64,000 nt of DNA from Podarcis filfolensis (lineage: Eukaryota), in assembly GCA_964270895.1 (NCBI GenBank), contig OZ185436.1; one strand, 5' to 3'. Made by a program: the position numbers and the translations under genes. This document shows, piece after piece, positions 12,535 through 33,790 of the stretch. The notes beneath the pieces were generated by a model. It saw only the letters and a program-made list of their open reading frames with translations, did no database searches and had not been told where the DNA came from. Each line of letters starts with the position of its first letter. Within the stretch, counting starts at the first letter, position 1.

Positions 12535-14820
12535 GTATGTATGTGCAACAGCTTGCTCCCATCATCTAGGTTTTAAAAAAATCTCCCCTGTAAATATTTG
12601 CTGTCATTGGCTAGACATAGGATCAAAGGTGAATCTGCTTCTGCACTTGTTTCTGCTTCTGGAGGCCCACCTCACTTAGACTCTACATGACCTCAGATCT
12701 TCGGGTTTAAAAATGCTTTCATTTTAAGAGCAAGTTGACATGAAAGGAATTATATTAATTTCTTCCAATTTTCTGCCATTCAGACTCCTTTCAAAGAGCA
12801 CGGCCTTCTTAATTATGTTTGTTTTTGTTAGCCTCTTCCTATTATCCTCGGATATTGTGCAGATCAGGAGTAACACAGCTATGTTAAAGTCTGGAGGCTG
12901 AATGGAATGTTGTTCTAGTTGCCTGTAGGAACAAGCGAAGAGAGGATAGTTTGCAATCTTTGCAATGCTCATTTGGTGGAAGCTGTTAAAAGAATACGGT
13001 CTGTTTATAGTCTTCATCTGACAACTCGGCACATAGTTACATTTTTACTGTTCCTCAGTGTTATCAGTTAGCTTCCTCTGTGAGATCTTTTGATCCACAA
13101 TAAGAGAAAGAGACATTTAAAAAAATAATACAAAAATTAGATTGCACAGTGTGTATGGGTGTAGGATATATAATAATGTTACAAGACTTGGAAAAACATA
13201 GGCTATAATCTTATGATACATACTGTGTTACGAATAAATATTTAAGACAAGCTTCATCTGGGAAGGTACATCAATTATAGTGCAATCCTATATGTGTTTA
13301 CTTTGAAATAAACCCAATTAGGTTAGAACCAATGGAACCTACTCTAAGGTGAATGTCTGTGGGATTGCAGCCTTAACATGTTTGAGATCACTACTGTGCT
13401 GGCAATGAGAAATCCTGAATGCAAAATCATGGCGCTAAAGCGCTGTGTACTCTCAACAATAATTTAGCCTTGGCAAAATGCTATTTCCTCTGTATCTTAG
13501 TCATTTAAAAAGTCTCCATTGACCTTGATATAATAGGACTCTTCTACCCTCTTGTGTTTAAAGTTAGCATGTGCTATGGTTGTCATAATTAGAATTTCCA
13601 TGACAACACGTTTTGTGTCTGTGTGCCTAATTCCCTGATATAGGTAACAGTTCCATCAGAAATAAAGCTGTCATATTCACAGAAAAGAGACTAAAAGCAA
13701 CCTGATAAATGTGCTCAGTAAACAAGGTAGTTGTATAGATTCAAAAATAACTTGATGCACATAAAAGCTCTCTTTATATTTACTAGGATTTCTTTAAGCA
13801 TATTATTCAGTAGGTGCACTATTCAACAAAGGAAAGTTATTACAGATAAGGATGACTGAGAATTAAATGTGTTCCTGTCATAGCAACAACATATCTTGAG
13901 TACCTTAAGTAACAGTTCAGCCAATCGGCAAAGTGAATACTGAAACACTTCTAAAAGAAAATGGCTTATGCTAGCACACCTAGAGAGCCATAGAAAGCAT
14001 TAGTTCACTTGAATGAAGCAGCAGTGGTTTGCCAGGTGTTACTCTTGAGCTGCAAAATACTGAAAACCACATTTTTTTTCCAGAGTAGGATGGCATGGCA
14101 ATAAAGAGAAACACCATCTCTTGGTTTGCTTCCTGTTATAACAAGAACATTCTTGCCTATAAGTTGGCAGCTGCTAATAGTTATTAGCATATATAGCACT
14201 AATGTTAGTTTTGTATTGTGGATGCTACGAGTCCATGGAATTGAGGGGGGTCAACTATCTTGCTCCAATATTTAGAGGGGTAGATGTGTTGGTCTGTTGC
14301 AGCAATTGGTCTGTTGTGACACCTTAGACTGACAAATTTAGTATGGTATAAGTTTTTTGTGGGCTAAAGTCCACTTATTTGCGACCCTTTAAGGTGCCCC
14401 AAGTCTCTCATTGCCCCCCCCCAACTTGTCACTGGCATAAATTTTTTAGCCATTAATGTATGTACAAATAGCCCATGCCTTGCCCAGTTTCCCTTAAATA
14501 AAAATGATCCACATTCTAAATTAGTTATGGGCTGGTGTACCACCATAAAGGCTCCTTCTACCTTCACTGCTTCCTTTCTCTGCTTCCAAACTTAGCATTC
14601 GCACCAGGTTTCTTCATAATTCCACATAGCTGATTTCCTTTCCCTGATATGCTTCCCGAACGTGAAATGAACCCTGGGCTGCCTCTTTCGTTGCACTTTC
14701 TGGATCCCAGTTGACTTGGTAGAGACCTCATTCCCTTTCTTCTGTCACATCAAACTTGGCAACACTTTCTCCTACATGTTTTATTCTAGGATCAGCCCTT
14801 CCTCTTGTCCCATTTTGATA

Positions 14821-15153
14821 TAAAGGGAAAGGGACCCCTGACCATTAGGTCCAGTCGCGGATGACTCTGGGGTTGCAGCGCTCATCTCGCTTTATTGGCC
14901 GAGGGAGCCGGCGTGTGGCCAGCATGTCTAAACCGCTTCTGGCGAACCAGAGCAGCGCACGGAAACGCCGTTTACCTTCCCGCTGGAGCTATACCTATTT
15001 ATCTACTTGCACTTCGTGCTTTCGAACTGCTAGGTTGGCAGGAGCAGGAACCGAGCAACAGGAGCTCACCCCGTCACGGGGATTCGAACCGCCGACCTTC
15101 TGATCAGAAAGCCCTAGGCTCTGTGGTTTAATACATGGCACCACCTGCATCCC
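14821..15153 (-). mobile_element. Sauria SINE
   Basis: Reverse complement shows a tRNA-derived head with B box (ggttcgaatcc) and a Bov-B-like ACCTTT tail. Confidence 0.9.
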
Positions 15154-16605
15154 TCCCATTTTAATATAGGTACATACAAATGGAGGGCAGGCATAAGCCC
15201 TCTTCATCTCTGCCCTAAGCTTCCCTTATCAACCTCCAGGCAGTCTACTGATCTGCATCATTGAGAATCCTATAAAACACATCTCTTCTTTACTTCAGTG
15301 GAAGAAAAAGGAAGCCTTAGTGTACATATTGCTGTCAAATAAGGGAAGAGGGATACTTTGGCTTCTACCCTGCCCATACAAGCTGTGTGTGTACAATCAT
15401 ATTTCACTCCGTATTATGTTGTCAGCTTGTGTTTTCTATTGAATCAATGCCTTCTGATTTATTTATTTAGTTTCCTAACCATTTTATTTCAACAACATAT
15501 TTTCCATGAGATTCTAATAATCCATACAATATACTGCAGTGCACCATGAATGACATGCTTGGTGACCTTATTTAATTAATTATTTTATTAAATTAATATA
15601 GACATGATGTCTTTGCATGAATAGTTTCAGTAACATGCTGTGTTTGGTGGGGGGGTGAGGGTGCTGTCATACTACATTTCACTCAATGCCCAGCTTATTG
15701 TCTGCTATGTCCTGCGGGCCTAATTCAGCCTTTATGCTTTCTAGGGTTTGCAGACTCTCATCAGATTCCACCCCCCCCACCTGATATATCAGATTTCCCT
15801 TTTTCTTTTTAAAGTAGAAATATGAGCATGAAGTAGATCCTTGTTGGCATCACTAAGTACTGTAAATTCTGGCTATGTGCCATGTATTTTCTTTTTTCAG
15901 TATTAAATACTGCCAGCTGTTACAAAGCTCCTTTGGGTGTTCATTTGGCACCTCCTCAACCTACTTGGTGCCAGCCAGTTCATTGCTGCCCTTTCATCCA
16001 GCTGCTGTTCTGTGTCGCTATCAATTTCCAAGCTCATTTGAATGAGCATTAAACAAGCTTTTGGTTTGACTCATTGTGCCTCTATCCAGATGCATTCATA
16101 AATTGCTTGTTGGACTCTGTCCAAACACTAGTTTTGTAACACTATTGCACTCCAGCTAATTATCCATTGATTACAAATATTAGTTAAAAATATTTGGGAC
16201 TCAAATTCTTTCTGGCAGGATCTGTGCTTGGCTGGCTTGTTAAGTTAAAATAGTGTTGAAATACTTCTTCGTCGTTGTTTTTCCCATTTGAGATTTCTGA
16301 AGCTGTTTGACAAAAGCAAAATGACAGTGTGAGAAATAGGGCGGCAAGTGGTAAGACAATCGCTCTTGATGTTTTTTTCAGTTCTGAGCTCCAGCCCTCT
16401 GCCCACTTCTAAAATAATCCTAGGATATAGGTTATTAATAAAGCTTCGACAGTTGTGACTATTTTCTGTATAACTTGGTCCGTGTGAGTGTGAATAGTGT
16501 TTGGGTAGATATCCTAAAATCACTCTGACACACCTTTTAAAGCTCTGGTGTGGGCTTGTATGTTGTGCTGCCACCTAATTTGTTTTTTTATGTGTTATAT
16601 TTCAG

Positions 16606-16645
16606 AATGAATTGGATAGGATGAAAGCCCAGTTAGCCATGAAAG
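16606..16645 (+). CDS. TRAIP: TRAIP coding exon 4 (NELDRMKAQLAMK)
   Basis: 40 nt; tttcag| and |gtgagt; phase 0 to 1. Confidence 0.94.
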
Positions 16646-16736
16646 GTGAGTTGAAAAATAGAAGAGGAAGAGGTTTGCCCTTTAGTAAAGTATTTATGTG
16701 TCCCAGTAAAGTATTAACTTTACTGAAGACTTTACT

Positions 16737-17096
16737 GAGATACGGTTGGCACTGTGGTCTAAACTACAGAGCCTAGGGCTTGCCAGTCAGAAGGTCGGCG
16801 GTTCGAATCCCTGCGACGGGGTGAGCTCTCGTTGCTCTGTCCCAGCTTCTGCCAACCTAGCAGTTTGAAAGCACGTCAAAGTGCAAGTAGATAAATAGGT
16901 ACCGCTCCCGCGGGAAGGTAAACAGCGTTTCTGTGCACTGCTCTGGTTTCACCAGAAGCGGCTTAGTCATGCTGGCCACATGACCCAGAAAAACTGTCTG
17001 CGGACAAACGTCGGCTCCCTCGGCCAGTAAAGCGAGATGAGCACCGCAACCCCAGAGTCGTCCGCGACGGGACTTAGCTGTCAGGGGTCCTTTACC
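16737..17096 (+). mobile_element. Sauria SINE
   Basis: A/B boxes, conserved body, ggggtcctttacc tail. Confidence 0.9.
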
Positions 17097-18857
17097 CCCC
17101 CCCTTTTTTTTAAAAAGTATTAACAAGGTTTGCATGATGACTTAAAGCTGTGTTTAAAACTGACTCCAATTCCAAACACATATATACATGAAATGCTTTG
17201 GGTCACTTGTTGACCAGAGTTTAAAGACTCTGCTCAGCCACAGGGATTTGGCATGACACAGTTGAGCTTGGTGAAAAACTTCAGTGAGACTATTCAGATA
17301 AACTTAAGGTAAATGCCTCCTTGTTACGAAACTTGTACCTGGCTAATGTCAGTGGTTTTGTAGTGAAAAAATGCAGAGGTGTTGCATATAATTGAGAAAC
17401 CAAATAGAAGTGGGAAACGGAGGAGGGGAGAGGATTTTGTCAGCTATCTGAATGATGGTCCATGTGTCTGGTTCCTCATGTGATTCCATTTCCCCATTGC
17501 TTTAAAGAGCATTATAACTTTAATTTTAGAAATGCTTTATGGAGACAGTTAAGTGAAAGCCTTGGAGACTTTGTTGATGGCTTTTAAAGCATTGTCTGTA
17601 GGCAGCTGTGAGTCATAGGCAGTGAAGGGAAAATGTCACTCAAAATGAATGACAGAAATTCCAAAACATGAGAATGCAGTAAAGTGAAGAGATTTTAAAT
17701 GAGCAACCAGGGAGGGTTCTTCTGTTTCTAACGAGCTGTCTTTTCCCATTGGACTGTTTGCCTTCCTCTACAATTACAAATTAAGGAGCCAAAAATAAGC
17801 TACATCTCTCCCTGAGATGAACAACTTCCCTCATAGCTTGCATACTGAGACAGGAGCAACTGCTATATCGAACACAAGGGTGGCTTGTAGCACTGTACCT
17901 TGCTTGGTTAAGAAACACATTGAAGCTTTGACACACTTTAGGTGCTCTTTGGAGGGGAATAAAAGGTGATTATCTGCCTAATCAGTTTTGCAGGCCTGCC
18001 ATATCTCTAATATAAATGTGTCTTTTATGAAGTCTTGATGGCCCTGTAACTTTTGCAGATGCACAAACTGGGACAATGTGTTTTGTTCCAGGAATTAAAC
18101 GAAGTATGTTACATTTAAATTTCTTGCTCAGGGCGCAAAGTGTGGTGAAAATAAATAAGTTAGAATAGGAATGTAACAATACAGTAACATAATTGTTCTG
18201 TGTGTCATCGTTGTCTCACTATTCACAGCAACAGCTGAAATCTTGCCTAAGCATGTACCCAACACACAAGGGTTCACACCAAAAACAGAATACAGAAGTC
18301 AGACATCAAAATTTCATGGTTTTGTAAATGTTATGTTTATGAATAATGCTGACTCCCTGCACAGTACTTAGTTGTACCGGAGCTTGTTTTGATGCTTGGG
18401 AGGGTGGGAGCTGATGGCTACCATATTGGCATTGCCAACTGAACAGGTTCTGAAGAGAGCATGCTGTTACTCTTGTTCTAAAGAAACCTTGAAGCTTAGT
18501 AGAGCTTGTAACAAGGATTATTTGAAGTGGCACATGGTTCTTGCAGAACAGATTCAGTAATGGCCATCCAATTGTTCCAAGCAATTTCTAGACCAAAGGT
18601 GGCTAAATTGGATCCCTCCAGAAGTTGCTGGACTACAGCTCCTGTCATTCATGATCATTGGCCACAGTGGCTGGAGCTGATAATAGTTGGAGCCCTAACA
18701 GCAACTGGAGGGCCACAGGTTAGCCACCCCTGTTTTATGCCTTTGAAAGTTCCCCTTGCTTTGCTTGTCGTTCGTCACGTTCCTGCCCCAAGTCCAAAGA
18801 CCTAAAGAACTTGGGGAGATTTGTTTGAAGCACTGTAATTGTGTTTTTTTGTTTCAG

Positions 18858-18985
18858 AGAAGGAGAAACGGGATATCCAAAATATTGTGAATTCACTAAG
18901 GGAGACCCTGGATTTGCGCAATGCCACCATTGAATCACTCCAGAAATCTGTGACTCAGATGACAATGTTGTGTGCTACTCTCAAG
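18858..18985 (+). CDS. TRAIP: TRAIP coding exon 5 (EKEKRDIQNIVNSLRETLDLRNATIESLQKSVTQMTMLCATLK)
   Basis: 128 nt; gtttcag| and |gtatgt; phase 1 to 0. Confidence 0.95.
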
Positions 18986-21900
18986 GTATGTTCAAAATGG
19001 TCTGGGTCTGTACTGTAATATGATAAGATTCTCTTCTAGTTACCATATATCTGAAGGTAAAAAGAAGAAGAAGTGTGAGATTGTGTGTTTGCGTATAAGA
19101 TGCCATCGTACTGTAAAATCATTTAACCTTCCTGATTTCAACCATACACAGTTGAAGGTGAGCTGATTGGAATTGTGGGACTTAAATCCAAGTAAGGTGA
19201 AGTGCTTACAACCCCCTTTTATGCCAGGTTTTCCCAGTGCAGAAAGAGTTTTTAAGCTCTCTGCCTTGGTTGGGGGGCCTAATGTGTGCTCAGTGCACTG
19301 GCTTGCATGGAGGCAGTTTGAGTATACGTGCTTCCATGTATACATTGAACCCTTGAAAATGAGCCGCCACATAGGATGTGATTGTCCTGTATCTTAAATA
19401 CATCTCATGGTATGACTTGAAAGTTTTAATGTACAACATCCAGCATCCTAAGGTAAAAAGTCCTTTTAGACTTAGCAGGAGAGACAAAAGATGAAGCAAG
19501 TATAAACCAGGCAGGTGAGACTTCCATCGTGGAGTACCAGATGATTCTAAATCTAAGGTTTTGGCATTTGCTTCCCTTTGCCTTTATCTTATAAAAGCCC
19601 AAATGCAGGATGTAACACTTTCTTGATTTTGCTGGTTTGGTGTTCGCTCAGGGGTGGGAAAACAGGCTGTTTGGCAGGTGAGGCTGGCTTGGCCCAATCA
19701 CCTGATGTCATGTATGATTTTAGGTGCGATCCAAGTAACTAAACAGCTGGGTCATAAGGACTTCTGAAATGCTTTAGAAACTCTGGGCACAAGTCCCAAC
19801 AATCGGGATTTATGGTGCTTCAGAAGCACTATAAATCAGAAGCCCCACATGCAGTGCTTCTGAAGTGCCAATAGTCAACAGATCATTGGGACTTGAAAGC
19901 ACAGCACTGTACTCCTTACAAGCCTCTTGCAAAGAGCCCATTGTCAGGGCATCAAAGAGTTTCATAGCCTGACGTCAAACTGGCCTAGAGGCGGTAGGGG
20001 ATCAGAAACTGGCCTTCCGGCCAAATGCATTTCCCTACCCTGTGCTAAACTGTCCCTGTAAAAAAGTGACATTCATGCTTATCAAGGGGTTGAAATGGGA
20101 AGAAAGTATGTACGTCACCAGTGTTCTCCACTAGCATGTAAAGGTAGCTGTAGTGAGTCTGGTCTGTTTTGAGAATGAATATCTCCTCCTGCATTGCTTA
20201 GGAATACACCAAGTGGGGTCTGGGAGGGTCCACCTCTGTATGTGTGGATAAATGATATGATATAGATGTGATAAAGAACCTTATAGTTATTCCCTCTCTT
20301 TTCTCTTTCTTTTCTATATCTTGGTTTTTTATTCTTGTTCTGTAGACTAGGCTGATTTTAATGGTATTTTATGCCGAAAATTTTCATTATTTTTTTAAAA
20401 GGAATATGACCTTGGCATCTGCTGAAGACAAATGTTTGTTGATTTGGTTTTAGACTACTAGCCACATCCTCTTCCATCCCATCCAAAAATAATGCCTAAG
20501 TAAATTGACTTTTACCATAATTCCTGATATGATGTCCTCATGAGTGATAGGTCCATGGGTCAAATATTATGCCTTGAGAAAAGAGGCTAAGCTGAAAACA
20601 CAGTTTGGCTGTGTGATAGTGGAAGACATTTTAAGTGAGAACTTCCATGTCAAGATGCGTTTCTGGAAATGATGTGAGTTAGACGGGTTATAACGACTTG
20701 CTTCTGCCTTTTAGATCTCTGTTGATATGAATGCAGTTTTATGAGTTGGCAAGCGGAAAGGGGTTGTTTCTCTTGGTACTCAACAGATGTCGCATTTTAG
20801 GCTGCACTTTTAACGTGACATGATCAGAAGGAAGCTGAGATACACAAATCATTCATGCTATCTTTTCATTGCTCTTCCATATTCTGACTTCTCCCAGGAC
20901 AGTTGATGTTTCAGTGAGGTGTACTTTATTCGCTGCTTTTTCTAATCATGCAGACCCTGCAGCTGCTCTAAGACACTGGGGCTAAGCCTATTAATTATAT
21001 AATCTGAGGCAACCGCACCCCACCCCAGATTTGGAGACAGCTTTCAAACTTTGTATGCATTTTCTGTCTAGAGCTTAGAATTTCTTCCCCATTCTGAAAA
21101 ACAGAATTGCAACTGAAGCTGTCTCCAAGCATGCTATCAATGTGCGGCAAGTGCCAAACGGGTGAGCTTTGCTTTTCCTTCTTGGCTGTGCTGGAGAAAG
21201 CCTCTCTAGCAACAGCAGAAGCTAAATCCACTGTGCCCTTCCTGTTCTGGCCATTAAATGCATTAGCATTACCAGCTAGATGCTGCTGAGGAGTTAAAAA
21301 GCTAAACTGGAAGCGTTGGGAAGAGTTGTAAAAACGGGGGATTAACGAAGACTGGGTGAGCTCTCATCAGCCAGCCAGCATTTTAGGCATTCATTTCTGT
21401 AAGTACATGAGGTAGGGAAGTAGTATGTTGGCAAATACATCTAGAATATTTCACCTTCTGTATGGAGTAAAGCTTAATATCATCTTGTAGATATTCTAGT
21501 CTTTGACCAGTCTTTTCTCTGAAGTATGATCAAACAGCATTGCTTCTTCCCTGGCTTTCAGTTCAGAGGGAAAGTAGGCAGGATCCTTTGAAGTTTGTGC
21601 CAAGCTGACCAACCCAATCAAAGCCTAGAAATCTCAAGTGTATTGAAGGAGGTTTATTTTCTTTAAATCTGCTGAGGAAGCTCCCTAAACACACACTGCA
21701 TTGATCCTGTGCAGGTCACTCTATATTCAAGGAAGCTGTGCATTTTAATATAAGTATAGAAGCTGTTACAATATGATGGTTAAAGGTGGGGTAGACTTTC
21801 GGTGGTGGTCTCATGAGAGCAGAGTAAAATGAAAGGAAGGAATTTGTGAGATATTTTCCTGCTCACAAAAGAGAAATCATGATATTGCACAAGTTTGTTT

Positions 21901-22266
21901 CTACCACGTTGCACTTAACTGTATCATGCATGTGGTCTAATTTATCTACAGATCATGAACAAGTTGCCATGAAGCATTCGTGTGGCACTTTAAAAAAAAA
22001 ATGCATTGCAAGAGTGGAAACAAGAAGTATTTAAGGGGGGGGGATGTTTTTTTCCTGGAATTAAGTACTTCTCTCATTTGTAAGCAATGACCTCAATCTG
22101 TAAATATTATTATTAGATAAGTTATGATCCATGGATATGCCAGACACCTGAAATGTAGACTGTGGGCTATTGAAGTAGCAAGAGCTTTGGAAATGGCTTG
22201 ATGTTAAGTCCAAATTTTGCTTCCATGGGGATTCCTCTTAAACAAAAATAGTGCTTTTTTTCTCAG

Positions 22267-22361
22267 AAACAAATGAAGTATCTGGAGCAACAGCAAGATG
22301 ATGCGAAGAGTGCAAAAGAGGAGGCCCGAAGGCTGAGAAACAGACTGAAAACATTGGAGGG
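22267..22361 (+). CDS. TRAIP: TRAIP coding exon 6 (KQMKYLEQQQDDAKSAKEEARRLRNRLKTLE)
   Basis: 95 nt; tctcag| and |gtgaga; phase 0 to 2. Confidence 0.96.
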
Positions 22362-23628
22362 GTGAGAAAACAAGCTTTGGCTCTGTACATACATCTTCTG
22401 GTTCTGTTAGCAGACTGCTCAGCAACCTCACATTTCTAGAAGACATCATTGGACCAGAAGACCTTTGAGGCCTCTTCCAACTCTGAGTCTGTAACTTTAC
22501 AGTAGAAACACTTATTGAATTTACTCCTGTATTGCACACGTGTTTTGCCAAATATGTTGCAAAAATTAGGGTGTGCATTAGATTCGAGGGCGCATTACAT
22601 TCGAGAAAATACGGTACTTAGGGTTTCAGGGCACACTAGCATGCAGTGTCTTAGGTCTCCCATGACCAAGCCTTCCTCTTGAATTTAATCTTTCTGGGGA
22701 GGGCAAAAGATTTACAGTGATTTGTCAGGGGATACTCTCCCTTCCTTTTTGGTTTAAGGTGGTGGGGGGGGAGAGTGAAGTAAGCAGCAGCAGTAAGAAG
22801 GAGCTGTCAGCCTGCTTGTGTGTAGAGCCTTGGCCACCCTGTTTCCTGGTCTTCTGCTCCCTGAACCCAGTGGCAGTCCTTACTGCACTACTCTGCTCTG
22901 TTCCTCCTTCTCAACTCCTTCATCTCTCCCTCTTGCTCTTTCTTGCTCTCCAGCCCAGATCACGGCTGCTCTCCTTCTTTGTTCCCTTCCTTCCTCTTTT
23001 TCCTTCCTTCCGCCTGTATCCGCCTCTCCTTTCCATTCCGGACACCCTTGAGGGTCAAAGGTTCTGCTCTGCCTTGCACCAGCTAATCAGAGAGAAGGGA
23101 AGAGGGATCAGATGGAAGAAGGAATGTAATGTGCACCTTTCTTTGCCAAATTACATTACAAAAATTAGATTCAATGGCCCATTACATTCGAGTAAATATG
23201 GTAAGTGTTTCCAACATGAGCCTTGCCCCTTTATCATGTGCTTGTCTGATAATAATTGATGCTCAACTTTCTTACAAATGGCCATGCTTCTGAGTTCGTT
23301 TGCTAGAGGAAATTTAATACTGGTAACTCCTGATTTTGTTATTTATAATATTTACATACCATCTAATATGTGAAATCACCAAGTGGTTTACATAAAATAC
23401 AGTAAGATCATTTGGGGTGGGGGGGAATGCAGCAGTATAATTCCCATTCAACTGAAGCACACTAGTGTGCATATGAATCCAGCTATGTTGGGGGGAAAAT
23501 CATTGCTAGTGTGAAATACAGGATGTGTCTCTTCCAGGATTAACTGTTTCTGTGTTTTTATAACATGGACAAGCTGCCACTGAACAAAAAGCAACAACCC
23601 ACCTGTAATCTACCTTCCTTCGTACCAG

Positions 23629-23742
23629 GATTGAGACACTGCTGCAAAGTCAACGTCCCGAGGTAGAAAAGATGATCCGTGAAATGGGAACAGGTCAGGC
23701 TGCAGTGGAACAGCTTGCCGTCTATTGTATCTCACTGAAAAA
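23629..23742 (+). CDS. TRAIP: TRAIP coding exon 7 (IETLLQSQRPEVEKMIREMGTGQAAVEQLAVYCISLK)
   Basis: 114 nt; taccag| and |gtaggt; highly conserved segment. Confidence 0.97.
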
Positions 23743-24723
23743 GTAGGTGTATTAAATGCAGTAGCTTATTGACTTGGATTGGGTTTGTGTGGTACCCCCT
23801 AAAGGAATCGGTGGAAAAGTTAATCACAATAGGTGCTCTGGCAGAACGTTAGTTGCAATGCTAAGCCTTGGTGAATATAATTGAGGTGGCATAGATGGAA
23901 GATTTCAACACTGCAAGTATGCTATTGTTGCATTAGTGACACATCCATTGCTATGGAAACCACCTTCAGAGCTTTGCCAGAGTGCTCAGGAGGTGATTGT
24001 TTGATGAGAACGGAGGGGAGGAATTATTGTCATGATTCTGAGTAAGGCAGCATGGCCCCTGAATATCTCCCTGGTGCTGAGCAGAGTGCTTTACACTGCT
24101 GTGACATTAAGTATGCTGTAGTCGCCAGTCCCTACTGTGTGCACTAGAGGCCTTTTTATTTATACCGTTTATAATTCACAGCTTCTGCAGGCAATGTCAG
24201 ATAGCAAATGGGTAATCACAACTTTTAATAATGAGCTACCAGCGTGAAGTGTACCTGCATTGTAATCAGGAACTTCAGCACTGTTTTATAATCGTATTAA
24301 ATTGCTTTTAGAACCTTGAACTTAAAAATAAAAATCGAATTGTTGCATCTCGTTTCATTAATGAGAATGTAAAATACCGCACACGACTCAAGATTGTTTA
24401 AACATCCTATGCATTTTGACATGGAATATACTCTTCTGCCATTCTGCTGCTTGTCCCGGCCCAAACCAAGTAGTGCTGTCCCCCTGAAAGCATGTTTTCT
24501 CGCCTACACTGTAGTGTATCAGTGTTTTAACACTGTTCAAGTCAGTGTTGGCTTGTTCAGTGCTGTCTTCTCCCTGGAAGTTCTTGTATATATAACAGAA
24601 ACTTCTGCAGGCACTTAAGCTGTGAAACGAAAATCTTCAGTCTAAATTTGGTTACTGGCTTTATCTAAGAGCTGTTTGCTTGAAAGCATGTTCAACAGAT
24701 GGACTAATTTGGGCCCTCTCCAG

Positions 24724-24811
24724 GGAATATGAAAATCTGAAGGAGTCTCAGAAAGCATCAAACGATACAAAAGAGAAGCTGAGAAAGGAGTTGTTTTCTG
24801 CTAATCACAAG
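24724..24811 (+). CDS. TRAIP: TRAIP coding exon 8 (EYENLKESQKASNDTKEKLRKELFSANHK)
   Basis: 88 nt; ctccag| and |gtaaaa; phase 2 to 0. Confidence 0.95.
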
Positions 24812-25355
24812 GTAAAAGATGTGTTGATGCTCCTGCAGACACGTTGCAGAGGTATTTATGTGCAGCTCTTTATCAGTACCGCTACCGAAATAAAGCAAAA
24901 TACGTTTTAATTAGGTATGTATTTGTTTAACACAATTATTGTCCAGGCACTTACATTGACCATGTTGGCAGCTATCTTAAGCTGAGAAGTTCAGCTGTAG
25001 GTTCCGTAAGATTCCTCAATATGTCTGCATAACATTTATTAGTCTGCCTCAGTATTCTTTCTGCTTCTGCATAACAAGAATTGAAAAAAACTTCTAATAA
25101 AGCATTGTGTTATACATATATAACTGCACGAAGACAGTTTATAGTTTTAAAGTCAAAATGCACAACTGTCTCTTGAAAATCCCTCTGGATTAATATCAGG
25201 AAGGGTCTTAATTTGTACTGTAAACACAGGTGTAGGGAGGAAGGGTGGGAGAGGGTTTCTCTCTTGAGAATATACTGGGAATGGCAAGAGTTTATTGTAC
25301 CTTTATTATAAATGCCTACTTACAAGCACACTGAATTACTTTGAGCAAACTAGTA

Positions 25356-25581
25356 CAGTGGTACCTCGGGTTAAGTATTTAATTCATTCCGGAGGTCCGT
25401 TCTTAACCTGAAACTGTTCTTAACCTGAAGCACCACTTTAGCTAATGGGGCCTCCTGCTGCTGCTGCACCACCGGAGCACGATTTCTGTTCTCATCCTGA
25501 AGCAAAGTTCTTAACCCGAGGCACTATTTCTGGGTTAGCAGAGTCTGTAACCTGAAGCGTATGTAACCCGAGGTACCACTG
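25356..25581 (-). mobile_element. Family A MITE
   Basis: TIRs and TA TSD; internal sequence in reverse orientation. Confidence 0.9.
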
Positions 25582-25834
25582 TACCGCTGCCCTCAGCAGC
25601 TTCTCATTGACACCTGAAGAGATGAGCCACATTGGAGCTCCCTCTGCAGGAGCCTTGAAAGAATAAGAATCTGTTTCCATTTAGGACATCTTTATTTACA
25701 ATACACTAAATTATTTTATCCTGAAGTCTAAGAACGTGCATTTGTAAAACATAAACCACTGTAGTTCTTTTGAGCGCTTAGAAGCTTGACGTACTGCTGT
25801 ACTAGACTTCCAACATACGGTTTTAAATCTATAG

Positions 25835-25924
25835 TTACAGAAGACAGTTCTAGAGTTGGAGAAAACAACAGAAGAGGTGAAGAGCACCCAGACTGATCTG
25901 AGAAATGCAGATAATGAGATAATG
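25835..25924 (+). CDS. TRAIP: TRAIP coding exon 9 (LQKTVLELEKTTEEVKSTQTDLRNADNEIM)
   Basis: 90 nt; ctatag| and |gtgaga. Confidence 0.94.
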
Positions 25925-26139
25925 GTGAGAACATTCTTTTAACCTGCTGATAATTATTGTGGCCCTACAGCCTTCGTAGTGTATAGTCCAAATACTGTTC
26001 TAAATTCTACCCTGATTCAAAATGGCTGGGAGGCACCCTCAACTTCAGGATGCCTGTATCTTTGCAAGAGGGGATGTAGAAATCTTGGCTTTTGGTAGGA
26101 TTTCTGACATGTATTAATTGCTGCTCTTTCTTTCCACAG

Positions 26140-26228
26140 AGTTTGAAAAAGAAGATAAGAGTGATGCAAGATACCATTAAAGTGTCATCATTAAGCAATG
26201 AAGCACTTGGCCGGCTTGTCTCTGAAAG
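26140..26228 (+). CDS. TRAIP: TRAIP coding exon 10 (SLKKKIRVMQDTIKVSSLSNEALGRLVSE)
   Basis: 89 nt; ttccacag| and |gttggt; phase 0 to 2. Confidence 0.93.
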
Positions 26229-26529
26229 GTTGGTTTAGAGAAATTCTGTGGATATTGATGTAGCAGAGTTACTGTACCAGAGATTTTGTCCAATATAAGC
26301 ATTGCATACCTTCCTGAGCTGTCCAAAAGCACATCATAAGATGCCTTACATATAGTCAGGCTATTTGTCCAACTAGCCCAGTACTGCCTACTGTGACGGG
26401 GAGTGGCTCTCCAGGGTCTTTCCCACCACCTGCTACCTGACCCTTTTCATTAGAGTTCAGTATTTTGTCATTTGCTACAGCACCATCCATACCAGCTCAG
26501 AATAACACTAGTGCAAGTGTTTCTTCTGC

Positions 26530-27945
26530 CACTATTACATCAAACTTTTCACAAGGGCCAACATTGATGCCGAAATCCAGCATCGCCTGAGCTCTGCGAG
26601 TGCAGCTTTCTCCCGATTGAAGAGTGCAGAGTGTTGAGGACCGGGACATTTGCAGGGAAATCAAAATGCTTATTTACAAAGCTATTGTACTACCAACCTT
26701 GCTGTAAACTTGTGAAACATGGACCACTTATAAATGTCATCTCCAACTCCTTGAAAGATTCCATCAACGGTGTCTCCAAAAAATTTTACGCATCACTTGG
26801 GAAGAAAGGCGAACTAATATCAGTGTACTGGAAAAAGCAAAGATCACCAGTGTTGAAGAAATGATTCTTCAAGACACAAGATTTACCCACCCTGGAAGAG
26901 TGGCAGATGAAGGTGATGGACTATATGGAATTGGCGGAAATGACTGGCAGAATCCGAGATCTGGGAGAAGAGTTGGTGGAAGAAGATTGGAAGAAATTTA
27001 AAGACTATTTGCAGAAACACTGTAAAATTAATGAATGTTAAAATGATGTTGGATTAAAAATAAGTGGTATTAGCAACAAAGTTAATAAGAATATGCAAAA
27101 ATGGATTGATAATGGATGAAAATATAGAGTTATAATATGCTAAGATATAGAGTTAAGATAAAGGAAAGAGGGAAAGGATTTGCTGATTTGATTATGTAAA
27201 TGGGAACACAAAAAGGGGAGGTGCGAGGAGGTCAAGGAAACAAGCTAATGAGTTCAAAGATACAAAAAATGGATTGGTTTTTAATTTTTTCTTACTTATT
27301 TGTTTTTTGTACTTTGTATGTTTATTTTTCCTTTTTCTTTTTTCTATTTTATGTACTTTTGTATGTTTTCTTTTTATTTATCTCTTTTTATATGTTTTCT
27401 TTCTATTTTGTAAACCTTTGTTTTTTGTAAAATCTCAATAAATATTTAAAAAAAGAAAAAAAAGAAATGATTCTTCAACATCAACTTCGTTGGACTGGTC
27501 ATGTTGTGCGGCTGTCTGATGATCGTCTTCCATAGCAACTACTCTATTACAAACTTAAAAATGGAAAACGTAATGCTGCTGGTCAACAATAGAAGTTTAA
27601 AGACTGTCTCAAGGCAAATCTTTAAAAATGTAGTATAAACACTGACAACTGGGAAACACTGGCCTGTGAGCGCTCCAGTTGGAGAACAGCCTTTACCAAA
27701 GGTGTCATGGGTTTTGAAGACACTCAAACTCAGGACGCAAGGGAGAAACGTGCTAAGAGGAAGGCATGCTTGGCAAATCCACACCGTGATCAACTCCCGC
27801 CCGGAAACCAATGTCCCCACTGTGGAAGGACGTGTGGATCCAAAATTGGCCTCCACAGTCACTTACGGACTCACTGTTAAAACCATGTTTATGGAAGACA
27901 ATCTTACTCGGCTATGAGTGATCACCAAAGAAGAAAGAAGAAGAT
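26530..27945 (+). mobile_element. RTE-clade LINE 3' portion (degraded), interrupted by L1
   Basis: Degenerate ORF QLRWTGHVVRL...CPHCGRTCGSKIGLHSHLRTH (RTE C-terminal zinc finger) with stops and frameshifts; (GAA)n tail. Confidence 0.85.
26873..27461 (+). mobile_element. 5'-truncated L1 inserted in the RTE LINE
   Basis: TQDLPTLEEWQMKVMDYMELAEMTGRIRD...; poly(A); 17-bp TSD aagaaatgattcttcaa at 26856-26872 and 27462-27478. Confidence 0.92.
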
Positions 27946-28301
27946 TATATCAAACAGTAACCTAACCTTCCTATATAAATGTAGGGCTTCCTGTAACAGG
28001 CCAGTTTTACAGTACACTAACATGAATGGGATGTGAAGACCCCAGGCAACCTGGCAGTCATTTTGGTAATTTTGAACACTTTGCACATGTTGCTAGAAAG
28101 CAGAAGGAAGTTCTCTCTCTGAATTTAGTTCTACCGTATCCGTATTATATACTGTCATTGCCTTCCACCATCAGGAATGAGTACGAATAGGAAGCTAGTA
28201 TTTAGATGGTACAACATGTGGTGTGGGCTGGAAACTGAGACAGTTTACCTGTCTGACAGTGTAATGTTGTGTTGTGATATTTGTACAATTTTGCCTTACA
28301 G

Positions 28302-28487
28302 CCCTGCTCCTCTAGAATTGTTAACCCCAAAGCTCCATCGACCAGCTCACAGTGATGAGATTGACCTGAATGATACTTTTGATGTACAGACACCAAAGAA
28401 TGATACCTTTGATGTACAGACACCAAAGCATCCACCTCACAAGAGCATCTCTGCTCCTGCAAAAAAACTTAAACTGGATAAAAAGTT
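28302..28487 (+). CDS. TRAIP: TRAIP coding exon 11 (PAPLELLTPKLHRPAHSDEIDLNDTFDVQTPKNDTFDVQTPKHPPHKSISAPAKKLKLDKK)
   Basis: 186 nt; ttacag| and TT|gtgagt; phase 2 to 2; contains the DLNxTFDVxTP motif, duplicated. Confidence 0.93.
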
Positions 28488-29115
28488 GTGAGTCACAGTT
28501 GCTTCCCTTTTTACTGGGTGTATGTGTGCTCTTGATCTGTCTGGTATTCTCACTTCTGCATGCACTGTAAGCAATTTTCCAGCCATCTTAATTCTTTTAA
28601 TTTGTATACTGCCTTTCTATATTACTATACAGAAGGCGGTTTACAAGCTGAAGAAATAACAAATTGTACAACAAAGATCACATTTTGTTCTCATGGCTTT
28701 TGATGGAAATATCTCATTTTAAAGCTTTTGTTCACTGCTGAAGACTGTCACAACATATCTTACCTGTTGTGAGAGTAAAGTGAGACTTTGCCCCCAAAGT
28801 TGCCTATCTTATTGTCCATTATCTTTCTCAAATATCTAATTAAGAAGTCTCAATAACTAGGTGCTACTCTAACAGGGTAATTCCTAACCTGCATCCTTGC
28901 AATCTAAGACAGACAGAACTGCTTCAGGAAGAGGAAGGGAGAGCACAAACCCAAGCTACATAATTTGCGTAATAAGGAAACTTTAGTTTGTAGATTTCTT
29001 AAATAAGCACCCCTCATTTGTGTTACTTCTAACAAGTGCTTTATCTCTGCTCCCGTTGAATCCTAGAGATAATGAAGAATGACTTTCCTACTTGTATAAA
29101 GACTTTGGGGTAGGG

Positions 29116-31029
29116 TAGGGGTGGGAACCTCAGGTGCAGGGGCCAAATGTGGCTCTCCAAGCCTCTCTCTGGCTCTTGGGACTCTCCTCAGCCACACACC
29201 CTCACCAGACCTGCTTCACATCCTCCTTGTGCGATTCTGCCTGGCTGGAATGTGCCCTTGCACTCTGATAATGCCTCTTGCTTTTGTCTGGATGGAAGAT
29301 AAGAGAAGGATATATACAAACTAGTGTAGTGTACAAAGGTAATAATTACATTTGTTTTTGTTTTTTTAAGAAATATTTATTAAGATTTTACAAAGACAAA
29401 TATACAAAAACGCATAATAAAAAAGTAAAAAAAAATAAGTAAACATACAGAAAAAATAAGAAAAATTAAAAACAATTATTTTTCATAACTTAAAACTCGT
29501 TTGCTTGTTTCTTTGACTTCCTCACACCTCCCCTTCTTGTATTCCCATTTAAATAATCAAATCAGCAAATCCTTACCCTCTTTCAATTATCTTATCTCTA
29601 TAACTTAACATTTTATAACTCAGTATTTTCATCCATTATCAATTCATTTTTGCATATTCTTATTAACTTTGTTGCTAATACCACTTATTTCCAATCCAAC
29701 ACCATTTTAGTTATTGTTTTACCTATTTCTACCCTTCTTCCATATTCTTAAAGCATTACAGCTGGAAACCACTTAATTTCTATCCAACATCATTCTAACA
29801 TTCATTAATTTTACAATATTTCTGTAGATAGTCTTTAAATTTCTTCCAATCTTCTTCCACCGTCTTTTCTCCCTGGTCTCGGATTCTGCCAGTCATTTCT
29901 GCCAATCCCATATAATCCATCACCTTCATCTGCCATTCTTCCAAAGTGGGTAAATCTTGTGTCTTCCAATACTTTGCAATAAGTATTCTTGCTGCTGTTG
30001 TAGCATACATAAAAAAAGTTCTGTCCTTCTTTGGCACCATTTGGCCGACAATGCCCAGAAGGAAGGCCTCTGGTTTCTTCAGGAAGGTATATTTAAATAC
30101 CTTTTTCATTTCATTATAGATCATTTCCCAGAAAGCCTTAATCTTTGGGCACGTCCACCAAAGGTGAAAGAATGTACCTTCATTTTCTTTACATTTCCAA
30201 CATTTATTATCGGGCAAATGATAGATTTTTGCAAGCTTGACTGGTGTCATGTACCACCTGTAAATCATTTTCATAATATTCTCTCTTAAGGCATTACATG
30301 CCGTAAATTTCATACCGGTGGTCCACAACTGTTCCCAGTCAGCAAACATAATGTTATGTCCAACATCTTGTGCCCATTTAATCATAGCAGATTTCACCAT
30401 TTCATCCTGTGTATTCCATTTCAACAGCAAGTTATACATCCTTGACAAAATTTTAGTTTTGGGTTCTAGCAGTTCTGTTTCTAATTTTGATTTTTCCACC
30501 TGGAAACCAATTTTCTTGTCCAAATTATATGCCTCCATTATCTGATAGTAATGAAGCCAATCTCGCACTTTGTTTTTTAGTTTCTCAAAACTCTGCAGTT
30601 TCAGTCTATCTCCCTCTTGTTCCAAAATTTCCCAATATTTTGGCCATTTGGCCTCCATATTGAGCTTTTTCTGGGCTTTTGCTTCCATTGGTGACAGCCA
30701 CCTTGGGGTTTTATTTTCCAATAAATCCTTATATCTTATCCAAACATTGAACAAAGCTTTCCTGACAATATGGTTCTTAAATGCTTTATGTGCTTTAACC
30801 TTGTCGTACCACAAGTATGCATGCCACCCGAAGACATTGTTAAAACCTTCTAAATCCAAAATGTCTGTGTTCTCAAGAAGCAGCCAGTTTTTCAACCAGC
30901 AGAATGCTGCTGATTCATAGAATAATTACATTTGTTACTTTGCCCACTTTTTCTGGCCCCACCCACCACTGGCATGGTGGCCCCTAGAAAGAATACGGCC
31001 GTCTGGCTGAAAAAGGTTCCCCATCCCTG
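29116..31029. mobile_element. hAT-type non-autonomous element interrupted by L1
   Basis: Ends taggggtgggaacct and aggttccccatccctg; the 8-bp flanks match only partly (..taggg). Confidence 0.6.
29357..30920 (-). mobile_element. Young 5'-truncated L1; uninterrupted ORF2 C-terminus (29795-30895, 366 aa) with CCHC zinc knuckle
   Basis: CWKCKENEGTFFHLWWTC motif; 3'UTR and poly(A); 16-bp TSD aataattacatttgtt at 29341-29356 and 30921-30936. Confidence 0.95.
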
Positions 31030-31435
31030 AGTTAGGGCTTCAGCGAAATGATAACAATGGCAGCGAGGCAAAAGTAATGAAAGATCTACCACGTTTGCCT
31101 GTTGATCAGACCAGAGGCTTTTATCTTAGTGGTCAGAACAAAGAGAAGGGAGGAGAAGAGAACATTATAGTTGCATTTTATTATTATTTTAATTGAGACA
31201 TAAGAAGCCTATACTTTTGTAGTATGACCACTGCTAACAGCTGCTGGAGTCATAGTCCATAGGGTACCAGGTTGGCAAAGCCTGTTTTAGGTGTTGGCTT
31301 ATGATCTGGGCCACATTGTGAAAATTCATGTATGAATTCAAACTGGTGCCTCCAACTCTAAAGGGATATATTGAGCAATTTACTACTTTGTGGTGCGTAA
31401 TCTAAATTGTGTGTCGGTTTGTTTGTTTTTTCCAG

Positions 31436-31481
31436 TGCACCTGTGACAAGTTTATCAAGAGTTCTGAAAGAAACAGTGGAG
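31436..31481 (+). CDS. TRAIP: TRAIP coding exon 12 (APVTSLSRVLKETVE)
   Basis: 46 nt; ttttccag| and GAG|gtattg; supplies the required phase 2 to 0; the sequence itself is divergent. Confidence 0.75.
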
Positions 31482-31898
31482 GTATTGTAACGGATGACCT
31501 GAGTAGCAACTATAACCTCTTCAATCCACTATCTTTAGAGCTATTTTGAAAGCCATCTTTTCTCCAGACAGCCAAATTCTGCATGGATTTTAAAATAATA
31601 CATTTTTATGTGTTATAGAAAATAGTAAATATTACAGGTAACCCTGAGAGGTGTGCGAGTCAGCTTCCCACTGCTATGTATTCTGAATTATCTGGAGCAG
31701 GGTGCCCGTACTGTTGTCATCTGTTGATCTATCAGCTGGCACCAGAGCCCAGTGACTTTCGAACTTCCATTCCTCTCTAAGAATGTTTTAAAAATCTGCT
31801 TTTGCAGAAATGGCCATTTCCTTTCGCACAATACTGTAATGGATTACATGGATTCTAGCAGTGCTGCTTGTGTTTGGTTGCAAATATGAGTATTTTAG

Positions 31899-32057
31899 TT
31901 TAACTCTCCTACTTCTTCAAATACGGTTCAGAGCTGCTCAGCTGACACAGATGATGAGCATCTGGAAGATCTTCTGCCTGCTTTCATTAGAAACTCTGTT
32001 ATGTCCAAGAGGCCACCTGCAAGCAACATGCTTGTACCACAGAGGAACACAGGAATA
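31899..32057 (+). CDS. TRAIP: TRAIP coding exon 13 (FNSPTSSNTVQSCSADTDDEHLEDLLPAFIRNSVMSKRPPASNMLVPQRNTGI)
   Basis: 159 nt; ttttag| and |gtgagt. An alternative in-frame acceptor starts at 31932. The LPAFIRNS motif resembles mammalian FPIFVRNA. Confidence 0.82.
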
Positions 32058-32394
32058 GTGAGTACAAGTGGGATGCGCATCAGAGTTTTGCAGTGTGGAG
32101 TGTTCCTGCTTAATCTGCCAACCAGCAGCCAGCAAAACCCTGTTCCTGGACATGCCTTCTCATGTCCTCGTCTACAAATCTTACAAATTCAATATGCTCT
32201 GTGCTTTTTATTGCTGGTGGACCTGCTTAAACACCTGATCATGGAGCACATACCTAGCATATTCTGATCACCAAATCCTCTAGTGTGTTATGTGCCCTTT
32301 TACCCACTACAATCCTTTTTCTATTTCATAACAACTTCCTCCATGGGAGTCATATGCTTTTGCATTTTTAACTACTGGATTCTCTTCCTTGTAG

Positions 32395-32445
32395 GTGAGA
32401 ACTGGGTATGATGGCTTAGGAGGCAGAACCAAATTCATTCAGCCT
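32395..32445 (+). CDS. TRAIP: TRAIP coding exon 14 (VRTGYDGLGGRTKFIQP)
   Basis: 51 nt; ttgtag| and |GTATCCTTTCC (U12 donor); near-identical to the mammalian peptide. Confidence 0.97.
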
Positions 32446-33670
32446 GTATCCTTTCCTAAGATCTGTCCTGCAGAAGCTATGCTGATATCCAGCAGCACTG
32501 AATCTATGGTGATCAATGACACAAAAGACTAAGAAGAAACAGTGGCATTTACTAAGCCATCAAGCAATGTTCCAGTTGGAACAATGACATTCTGGCTTAA
32601 ATTCAAAGTGAGGAGAAGCTGAAATAATGGAATATATTTGGGGAATATATCCCTCTAAAATCAATCCGAATATACATTGTATGTATTCTTGGCTACAGTG
32701 TTCTACATTTACAGTCGTAACTTTGTTTTTCAAATAGCCTAGTTCTCAAACGTTTTGGCTCCTGGACGATTGAAACCCGGAAGTGACTGTTCTGGTTTTC
32801 AAATGTTCTTTTGGAAGCCAAACGTCCGACAGGGCTTCTGTGGCTTCCGATTGGCTGCAGGAGCTTCCTGCAGCCAATCAGAAACTGTGCTTTGGAAGTC
32901 GAATGCTTTGGCGGTCAAACGGACTTCCTGAACAGATTCCATTCAACTTCCAAGGTACGACGGTACTGGGAAAAGAAGTGGCCCCAGGAAACCTGGATCA
33001 GGATCTTGGTCAAATCCCACTTGTGAATCTATGGCTGAGTTTACTTCTGCTGTAGAGATCAAAGAAATGCACTGTTTAAATTATGTAAATATATACACTT
33101 TCGTTCCCTGAAAACTGGAAAACCTATATAAGTTGGTTCTTGTTCCAGTTTTTGCCGGTGGTAAAGTATTTCAAGACACATTTTGCAGCAAATGCTACAT
33201 TTTTCAGAGAATACCATGAACGTTTCTAGATCCATTGGTGTTTCTAGCATATCTGTGTTCACATTCAGCTTAATGTTCCTTTCCCTCCGCTTGTGCAGAG
33301 TTAAGAGGTCAGTAATCCAATATTTGTCATCAAAAGCCTGTTTGTAATGAGCTGTTGATGGTTATTGTTTTGAAGCTTATGTAGCAGTAAAACACTGCTA
33401 GGAGAGGGATCTGTCTGCTACCATCTCTTGGTCAGCCTTTGACTGGGTGATGGGAATAAAAACGTTTGACTCCATGATCAGCTAAAACATGACCTTTCCT
33501 CTCTCACTTGGGAGTTTGGGGAAAAAATGACCCTGAAGGAGGGACTCAGGGGGAGAGAAAATAATTTAGCCCCCAGATATAATGATTTATACATGTCAGA
33601 TATGTATGGGAATGTAAAACCTTTCTTTTAAATATTTGGCCACTATTTTCCTTGACGTGTCTCATTTCAG
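32446..33670 (+). other. U12-type (minor spliceosome) GT-AG intron, last intron of TRAIP
   Basis: 5' site GTATCCTTT; branch site TTTTCCTTGAC with A33655 15 nt from the 3' AG; no long polypyrimidine tract. Confidence 0.93.
32712..32963. mobile_element. Tc1/mariner MITE, family B, inside the U12 intron
   Basis: TA-CAGTCGTA...GGTACGACGG-TA; internal palindrome attggctgcagga-gct-tcctgcagccaat. Confidence 0.75.
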
Positions 33671-33790
33671 AGTATATCAACCGAGATTCGCCCCCTGCCT
33701 TTGAGGTGCAAGAAAAGAAGTGTTTCTAAGCAACCAACAGCAGCCGCTTCTGGCATCAGTCAGACTAAACTAGACAACTTCCTTAAGTAA
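33671..33790 (+). CDS. TRAIP: TRAIP coding exon 15 (SISTEIRPLPLRCKKRSVSKQPTAAASGISQTKLDNFLK*), PIP box at 33761-33784
   Basis: U12 branch point TTTTCCTTGAC at 33646-33656, then tttcag|. Contains IRPLP and a QxxLxxFL PIP box; stop TAA at 33788-33790. Confidence 0.95.
   Translation, partial: SISTEIRPLPLRCKKRSVSKQPTAAASGISQTKLDNFLK

What the first reader, a model, noticed from the sequence alone, without database searches (positions are those of the whole stretch)
28369..28428. In-frame tandem duplication doubles the conserved TRAIP FDVxTP CDK-site motif
Exon 11 has a 30-nt direct repeat (28369-28398 and 28399-28428) encoding NDTFDVQTPK twice. The only difference is a synonymous ACT/ACC, which is consistent with retention at the protein level (one site is weak evidence). 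The unit aligns with human DLNATFDVDTP, whose Thr counts to T324; here the two Thr count to T325 and T335, both in a TPK proline-directed CDK context. As I recall, recent work reports that CDK1 phosphorylation of this threonine lets TTF2 bind TRAIP and drive mitotic CMG/replisome disassembly. A doubled docking site could change avidity or timing in this lineage, or provide phospho-redundancy.
Basis: partly seen in the sequence, partly recalled or inferred. Interest (0 to 1): 0.75.

Follow-up and report, generated by a model that had tools for sequence, protein, structure and literature searches.

The report
Doubled TTF2-docking motif in lizard TRAIP
Wall lizards (Podarcis) and the common lizard (Zootoca) carry a real, old 30-base in-frame duplication in TRAIP that repeats the core of the mitotic CDK1/TTF2 docking site, but the second copy lacks part of the conserved motif and nothing yet shows that it does anything.

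Summary
Positions 28369-28398 and 28399-28428 are a head-to-tail 30-nt repeat that differs at one synonymous base (ACT at 28375-28377, ACC at 28405-28407). It lies in the 11th coding exon of a complete 15-exon, 470-aa TRAIP gene. The two threonines count to T325 and T335.

It is not an artefact. The same duplication is in an independent read set of the same organism, in a second organism's reads and in a further Logan contig. It is also in the separate genome assemblies of Podarcis muralis, P. raffonei, P. lilfordi and Zootoca vivipara. Lacerta agilis and every other squamate, tuatara, turtle, bird and mammal TRAIP that I examined have one copy.

The functional claim is untested, and three points weigh against simple avidity:
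- The conserved motif runs from -12 to +1, and copy 2 has T-P-K where I(-10), N/D(-9) and L(-8) normally sit.
- The two 14-residue footprints overlap.
- Substitution counts give no power to show selection.

Most likely this is a tolerated slippage duplication in a disordered tail, with T325 still the working site. It appears undescribed in the searchable literature, though it is present in RefSeq models.

The parts
7787..33790 (+). TRAIP coding region: 15 coding exons, 470 aa. E1 7787-7884, E2 10364-10421, E3 12451-12534, E4 16606-16645, E5 18858-18985, E6 22267-22361, E7 23629-23742, E8 24724-24811, E9 25835-25924, E10 26140-26228, E11 28302-28487, E12 31436-31481, E13 31932-32057, E14 32395-32445, E15 33671-33790 (stop included).
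   Evidence: All internal exons have AG/GT boundaries and the ORF has no stop. The protein differs by 1 aa from P. raffonei TRAIP X2, 3 from P. lilfordi, 5 from P. muralis and 12 from Zootoca. The near-identical orthologue P0167 has a RING domain in Pfam.
28302..28487 (+). Coding exon 11. It encodes the last base of the S295 codon, then P296 to K356 and the first two bases of F357. It holds T303-P-K, the duplicated motif and the basic PAKKLKLDKK stretch.
   Evidence: Acceptor AG at 28300-28301 and donor GTGAGT at 28488-28493. One RNA read of run X24 ends at 28487 and continues into unlike sequence.
28354..28368 (+). D313-E-I-D-L317: the conserved upstream part of the TTF2-docking motif. It is NOT duplicated.
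   Evidence: In 82 distinct single-copy TRAIP motif windows, I at -10 occurs in 78 and L at -8 in 81. The mouse AlphaFold 3 footprint starts at -10.
28369..28398 (+). Repeat copy 1: N318-D-T-F-D-V-Q-T325-P-K327. It follows directly on the native E-I-D-L, so the motif is complete from -12 to +2.
28399..28428 (+). Repeat copy 2: N328-D-T-F-D-V-Q-T335-P-K337. It is preceded by T-P-K instead of I-D-L and followed by the native H-P-P-H-K.

Best explanation
This is a genuine 30-bp in-frame tandem duplication in coding exon 11 of TRAIP, present in every genome sampled from the taxa that carry it. It most likely arose once by replication slippage or unequal exchange, early in the radiation of the lacertid tribe Lacertini. 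It repeats the 10-residue core NDTFDVQTPK of the short linear motif that CDK1 phosphorylates in mitosis (Xenopus/mouse T325, human T324) and that the TTF2 N-terminal zinc fingers then bind to bridge TRAIP to Pol epsilon and unload CMG. The duplication lies in a disordered tail. Copy 1 (T325) keeps the whole conserved motif D-E-I-D-L-N-x-T-F-D-V-x-T-P and is inferred to remain the working docking site. Copy 2 (T335) is an N-terminally truncated copy with T-P-K in place of I-D-L. Its expected footprint overlaps that of copy 1, so it is inferred to be a tolerated extra proline-directed site, at most auxiliary, and not a second full docking site. Shown here: the sequence, its reality, its distribution across species, the motif conservation and the predicted disorder. 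Inferred: which copy works, and that the effect is near-neutral.
For: Reality: searches show the repeat. In one search, independent contigs of runs X2 and X14 span it without an indel. In some searches, a Logan contig of ERR14042001 has an identical exon although its flanks differ from the window by about 3% and from P. muralis by 1.4%. In some searches, the separate assemblies of P. muralis, P. raffonei, P. lilfordi and Zootoca all carry it, with the same ACT (copy 1) / ACC (copy 2) difference. Restriction to this group: there is a single copy in Lacerta agilis, 17 other squamates, tuatara, two turtles, a bird and a mammal. In one search, of 139 session proteins with a motif, only those of the Podarcis/Zootoca cluster (and P0001, the window's own ORF) have two copies of this motif. 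In one search, a search restricted to this region gives only that cluster 110 bits and the next hit 56. Identity of the motif. Copy 2 incomplete: I at -10 in 78/82, L at -8 in 81/82; footprint 315-328, i.e. -10 to +3. Disorder: (pLDDT 31-36 and no secondary structure across residues 302-363). All 15 listed members of that cluster (RefSeq isoform models for P. muralis, P. raffonei and Zootoca; submitter-annotated proteins for P. lilfordi) keep both copies.
Against: Both copies are intact in all seven lacertid sequences (six Podarcis, one Zootoca). The one amino-acid change (D to A in Zootoca copy 2) restores the residue found in other squamates. Changes in the repeat are 3 synonymous to 1 non-synonymous. 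All of this is also what a functional second site would show. No binding, phosphorylation or structural test of either copy was possible here. The footprint comes from a published AlphaFold 3 prediction, not from a solved structure.
Confidence: 0.6

Rival explanations
1. One reading: both copies are phosphorylated by CDK1, and both act as TTF2 docking sites. This would give the TRAIP dimer four sites instead of two and change the avidity, timing or robustness of mitotic replisome unloading in these lizards.
For: Both copies keep T-P-K and the F-D-V core. Both are retained since before the Podarcis/Zootoca split, with only one amino-acid change, and that change is towards the consensus residue. 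TRAIP is a dimer, and T325 phosphorylation is essential for TTF2 binding.
Against: Copy 2 lacks the near-invariant I(-10) and L(-8). The predicted footprint of -10 to +3 is longer than the 10-residue spacing, so two TTF2 modules could not occupy one chain together, and a phosphorylated T325 would sit at the hydrophobic -10 position of copy 2 (inference). The repeat has 3 of 60 variable columns where 5.2 are expected at the non-coding rate, P = 0.22, so constraint is not shown. Lacerta agilis manages with one copy.
Confidence: 0.25
2. Register shift: copy 2 (with its native downstream H-P-P-H-K context) is the working site. Copy 1 has become a spacer or decoy that competes for CDK1 or TTF2.
For: Copy 2 keeps the ancestral +3 to +7 context. 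In Zootoca it also carries the ancestral A at -6.
Against: Positions +2 to +7 are far less conserved than -10 to +1. Copy 1 alone has the full conserved upstream part.
Confidence: 0.08
3. Assembly artefact, or a private or polymorphic allele of the sequenced individual.
For: None found. The only weakness is that RNA coverage was almost nil.
Against: Present in independent runs, in a further run's contig and in four other assemblies made by different projects.
Confidence: 0.01

Closest known systems
TRAIP T325 (human T324) CDK1 phospho-site, the docking motif for the TTF2 N-terminal tandem zinc fingers (bioRxiv 10.1101/2024.11.30.626186; 10.1101/2024.12.01.626218; NAR 2025, PMC12242765)
   Same: Same gene, same exon, and the same position about 30 residues after S295-P. 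The conserved sequence is the same: D-E-I-D-L-N-x-T-F-D-V-x-T-P. It lies in the same disordered tail between the coiled coil and the PIP box.
   Different: Here the last 10 residues of the motif (N to K) occur twice in tandem, giving a second T-P ten residues downstream without the I-x-L part. None of the papers read describes a species with two copies.
Single-copy TRAIP of Lacerta agilis (XP_032996458.1), the closest relative without the duplication
   Same: 93% identical protein, the same exon structure and the same N-D-T-F-D-V-Q-T-P unit, with ACC at the Thr(-5) codon as in copy 2.
   Different: It has one unit only. A 3-nt deletion also fuses K(+2)-H(+3) into N, and there is a cluster of private changes in residues 290-361.
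Euleptes europaea (gecko) TRAIP, which has a partial duplication in the same motif
   Same: A small in-frame tandem duplication inside the same docking motif.
   Different: It is independent and duplicates only six residues, D-L-(S/N)-A-T-F. That is the upstream half without the T-P, so no second phospho-acceptor is made.

Membership tests
TRAIP (RING E3 ubiquitin ligase) orthologue | N-terminal RING finger | tested here: met
   Exons 1-3 encode the C-x2-C ... C-x-H ... C-x2-C pattern. The orthologue P0167, which differs from the window protein by 1 aa, hits zf-RING_2 at residues 6-50 with E = 3.5e-10, above the Pfam cut-off.
TRAIP (RING E3 ubiquitin ligase) orthologue | Long coiled coil / leucine zipper, disordered tail and C-terminal PIP-box-like Q-x-x-L-x-x-F-L | tested here: met
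   The AlphaFold2 model of P. muralis TRAIP has helices 76-186 and 191-277, then pLDDT below 50 for 294-384. The window protein ends in QTKLDNFLK.
TRAIP (RING E3 ubiquitin ligase) orthologue | End-to-end similarity to annotated TRAIP proteins | tested here: met
   1-12 aa differences over 470 aa to RefSeq TRAIP of three Podarcis species and Zootoca. Exon 7 alone retrieves TRAIPs.
CDK1 / TTF2 docking motif of TRAIP | Thr-Pro at the homologous position, about 30 residues after the S295-P priming site | tested here: met
   S295-P and T325-P are present; T335-P is the extra one.
CDK1 / TTF2 docking motif of TRAIP | Full conserved context from -12 to +1 (D-E-I-[ND]-L-[DN]-A-T-F-D-V-x-T-P) | tested here: met
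   Met for copy 1, with D at -6, a position that tolerates A/D/T. NOT met for copy 2, which has T-P-K at -10 to -8.
CDK1 / TTF2 docking motif of TRAIP | Mitotic phosphorylation by cyclin B-CDK1 | not testable with these tools
   No phosphoproteomic data. The RNA runs gave one read.
CDK1 / TTF2 docking motif of TRAIP | Phospho-dependent binding to the TTF2 zinc fingers (K16/R20 pocket) | not tested
The structure tool here cannot fold complexes or phospho-peptides.

The most novel reading that the evidence does not exclude
The doubled core makes a two-register phospho-switch: TTF2 can dock at pT325 or at pT335. That would give redundancy, or a shifted geometry of the TRAIP-TTF2-Pol epsilon bridge, that selection has kept since the base of Lacertini. 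Separately, the indel is a rare genomic change that groups Podarcis with Zootoca against Lacerta. This conflicts with the published species tree, in which Podarcis is sister to all other Lacertini, and would document either hemiplasy or a secondary precise loss.
Probability: 0.12. Interest if true: 0.55.

Novelty: new variant of a known kind. Interest (0 to 1): 0.32.

Why it matters
The TRAIP pT325-TTF2 contact was described only in 2024-2026 and is the switch that licenses replisome unloading in mitosis. A natural allele in which only the C-terminal 10 residues of the motif are repeated is a ready-made test of where the motif begins. It asks whether I-x-L at -10/-8 is needed, and whether a second T-P ten residues away helps, competes or is ignored. 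For lizard systematics, the indel is a clean binary character in a radiation whose base is poorly resolved. If it is simply tolerated, it is one more example of small tandem duplications accumulating in disordered tails, even inside an essential short linear motif.

Tried and rejected
- The word search with the 62-aa exon peptide found only P0001, an ORF the window itself encodes, also on a Logan contig of another Podarcis. The tool's length window hides full-length TRAIPs, so I used exon 7 in the representative search to get full-length ids.
- The PDB sequence search with the exon gave no meaningful hit.
- My first Pfam call used an out-of-frame exon reference and failed. I redid it on an orthologue.
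- Two RNA-seq runs of organism F gave 0 reads and 1 read on the exon, so expression and inclusion of the repeat in mRNA are not shown by reads.
- The constraint test found 3 variable columns in 60 nt against 5.2 expected at the non-coding rate (P = 0.22), which gives no power.
- I tried to settle whether Lacerta lost the duplication or never had it. Locus-wide distances are nearly a trichotomy: Podarcis-Zootoca 0.059, Podarcis-Lacerta 0.062, Zootoca-Lacerta 0.063. Shared derived amino acids outside the indel are 1 (Podarcis+Zootoca), 2 (Zootoca+Lacerta) and 1 (Podarcis+Lacerta). This is inconclusive.
- The artefact and private-allele readings are rejected.
- Two literature searches for TRAIP together with lizard terms found nothing relevant.

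Full report
**Observation.** The + strand at 28369-28398 and 28399-28428 is a head-to-tail 30-nt repeat. Tandem Repeats Finder reports 28368-28428, period 30, 2.0 copies, 96% matches, score 115. In the exon's frame both units read NDTFDVQTPK. The only difference is the third base of the Thr(-5) codon: ACT at 28375-28377 against ACC at 28405-28407. The exon runs from 28302 (acceptor AG at 28300-28301) to 28487 (donor GTGAGT at 28488).

**Gene.** Stop-free segments on the + strand showed the RING, coiled-coil and PIP-box pieces of TRAIP.
- I built a 15-exon model with AG/GT at every internal boundary. It gives an uninterrupted 470-aa protein. Exon coordinates are listed under parts.
- It differs from RefSeq TRAIP of P. 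raffonei by 1 residue, P. lilfordi by 3, P. muralis by 5 and Zootoca vivipara by 12.
- The P. raffonei orthologue hits zf-RING_2 above the Pfam cut-off.
- The window is therefore from a Podarcis species. Among the four lacertid loci compared it is closest to P. raffonei (JC distance 0.015).

**What the motif is.**
- In Xenopus egg extract, S295 and T325 are phosphorylated by cyclin B-CDK1. T325A blocks CMG unloading. TTF2's N-terminal zinc fingers bind pT325 through K16/R20. Human T324 is the equivalent residue (10.1101/2024.11.30.626186).
- In mouse ES cells T325 is essential. AlphaFold 3 places TTF2's two zinc fingers on TRAIP 315-328, and ITC shows phospho-dependent binding of peptide 313-329 (10.1101/2024.12.01.626218).
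- PMC12242765 agrees that T325 is conserved.

**Is the duplication real?**
- Contigs from an independent study of the same organism (X2, 690 nt, word depth about 15) span 28150-28622 without a gap and without a base difference in the repeat.
- Contigs from another organism (X14, 709 nt) span 28150-28627 likewise. Their only indels are in the upstream intron.
- A Logan contig of ERR14042001 differs from the window by 24 mismatches in 938 nt and is closest to P. muralis (98.6%). Its exon is identical, including the T/C difference.
- The assemblies of P. muralis (GCA_964188315.1), P. raffonei (GCA_027172205.1), P. lilfordi (GCA_947686815.1) and Zootoca vivipara (GCA_963506605.1) all carry both units.
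- All 15 listed members of that protein cluster keep both units: RefSeq isoform models for P. muralis, P. raffonei and Zootoca, and submitter-annotated proteins for P. lilfordi.
- RNA evidence from reads is almost nil. One read of X24 ends at the exon 11 donor.

**Distribution.** The exon peptide alone could not reach full-length proteins. I therefore searched the representative library with the well-conserved exon 7, then ran the word search with a snake TRAIP.
- In the alignment of 24 TRAIPs and the close-up, a single copy is present in Lacerta agilis, Rhineura, Elgaria, Hemicordylus, Tiliqua, Lerista, Sceloporus, Anolis, Phrynosoma, Pogona, Phrynocephalus, Varanus, four geckos, two snakes, tuatara, two turtles, a bird and a mammal.
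- Only Podarcis and Zootoca have two copies.
- A search restricted to residues 296-350 of the P. muralis protein gave 110 bits to that one cluster and 56 bits to the next hit. Nothing else in that 5.8-billion-protein collection carries a doubled motif of this kind.

**History.** At the DNA level, Podarcis and Zootoca share ACT in copy 1 and ACC in copy 2.
- Lacerta's single unit has ACC, so ACC is the likely original state. The C-to-T change in copy 1 happened after the duplication and before the two alleles diverged.
- Later changes are AAT to AAC in copy 1 of P. muralis (synonymous), and GAT to GCT (D to A, back to the residue of other squamates) and GAT to GAC (synonymous) in copy 2 of Zootoca.
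- Lacerta agilis also lacks 3 further bases, which fuses K-H into N.
- Garcia-Porta et al. 2019 (PMC6733905) place Podarcis as sister to all other Lacertini, report very short basal branches, and cite a crown age of 15-47 Ma.
- On that tree, a duplication shared by Podarcis and Zootoca but absent from Lacerta means one of two things. Either it arose at or before the Lacertini crown and was later lost in the Lacerta line, or alleles were sorted incompletely across short internodes.
- My own data cannot decide. Locus-wide distances are nearly a trichotomy (0.059, 0.062, 0.063), and shared derived residues outside the indel are 1, 2 and 1 for the three possible pairings.
- The junction has only one to two bases of microhomology, as expected for slippage.

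**Does the second copy work?** I could test three things.
- *Motif extent.* In 82 distinct single-copy motif windows from the session's TRAIPs the conserved block runs from -12 to +1. I at -10 occurs in 78/82, L at -8 in 81/82, and F/Y at -4, D at -3, V at -2 and T-P are near-invariant. Positions +2 to +7 vary. The block starts exactly where the published footprint starts. The duplicated unit starts at -7. Copy 1 therefore keeps the whole block, while copy 2 has T-P-K at -10 to -8.
- *Overlap.* The spacing between the two Thr is 10 residues, but the footprint is 14 (-10 to +3). The two sites share residues 325-328, and T325 itself sits at the -10 position of copy 2. Two TTF2 modules on one chain are therefore unlikely. 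This is an inference from a published prediction.
- *Constraint.* Among four Podarcis and Zootoca, 8.7% of non-coding columns vary, 3.75% of coding columns vary, and 3 of the 60 repeat columns vary. About 5.2 are expected at the non-coding rate (P = 0.22). The 3:1 synonymous to non-synonymous ratio, counting the shared ACT change, is suggestive but far too small a sample.

The AlphaFold2 model of the P. muralis protein has pLDDT 31-36 and no secondary structure across residues 302-363. The insertion therefore lies in a disordered tail, where ten extra residues are easily tolerated.

**Verdict.** The observation and the gene and motif identification are right, and the duplication is real and old. 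It is restricted to part of Lacertini among all TRAIPs available. The functional claim is open. The anatomy favours T325 as the working site, with the second T-P as a tolerated or at most auxiliary extra. I estimate 0.6 for that reading, 0.25 for a working double site and 0.08 for a register shift.

I found no paper that mentions the duplication, although it is present in RefSeq protein models.

Noticed in passing
P0053 (Euleptes europaea TRAIP), residues about 312-330; alignment A3: There is an independent 6-residue tandem duplication in the same motif, DLSATF followed by DLNATFDVETPK. It repeats the upstream half without the T-P, so the docking motif has been hit by small duplications at least twice in squamates.
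   Followed up: partly
L002:20925-21110 (Lacerta agilis exon 11): The unit is single-copy, but a 3-nt deletion turns T-P-K-H into T-P-N. Eight of the 11 private amino-acid changes of Lacerta agilis TRAIP lie in residues 290-361, around the motif.
   Followed up: partly
window 28324-28326 (T303): An extra proline-directed site, T-P-K, lies between S295 and T325. It is N-P-K in most squamates, S-P-K in Zootoca and Lacerta, and T-P-K in Podarcis and also in agamids.
   Followed up: no
window 31436-31481 (exon 12): The sauropsid TRAIPs aligned here have no S/T-P at the place of the third CDK site (Xenopus S352, mouse S348, human S347). That region reads FAPVTSLSRVLKETVE here, so the priming logic described in frog and mouse cannot be identical.
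   Followed up: no
window about 26620-27590, + strand, intron 10: There are reverse-transcriptase-like open segments, a LINE remnant, inside the intron upstream of exon 11.
   Followed up: no
window 28592-28650: A short interspersed repeat lies just downstream of exon 11. Summed word depth is in the thousands in both DNA runs, with many contigs ending there.
   Followed up: no
P0061 (Ophiophagus hannah 'Transforming protein RhoA, partial', 577 aa): This king-cobra gene model fuses TRAIP-like and RhoA sequence. That is consistent with TRAIP and RHOA being neighbours, as in this window, where a RHOA-side promoter was noted at 44089-44295.
   Followed up: no
P0002 (Anas platyrhynchos 'myosin heavy chain, clone 203-like', 485 aa): This is a mis-named duck model that holds the TRAIP coiled-coil region twice. 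It is probably an annotation or assembly duplication, not a real protein.
   Followed up: no
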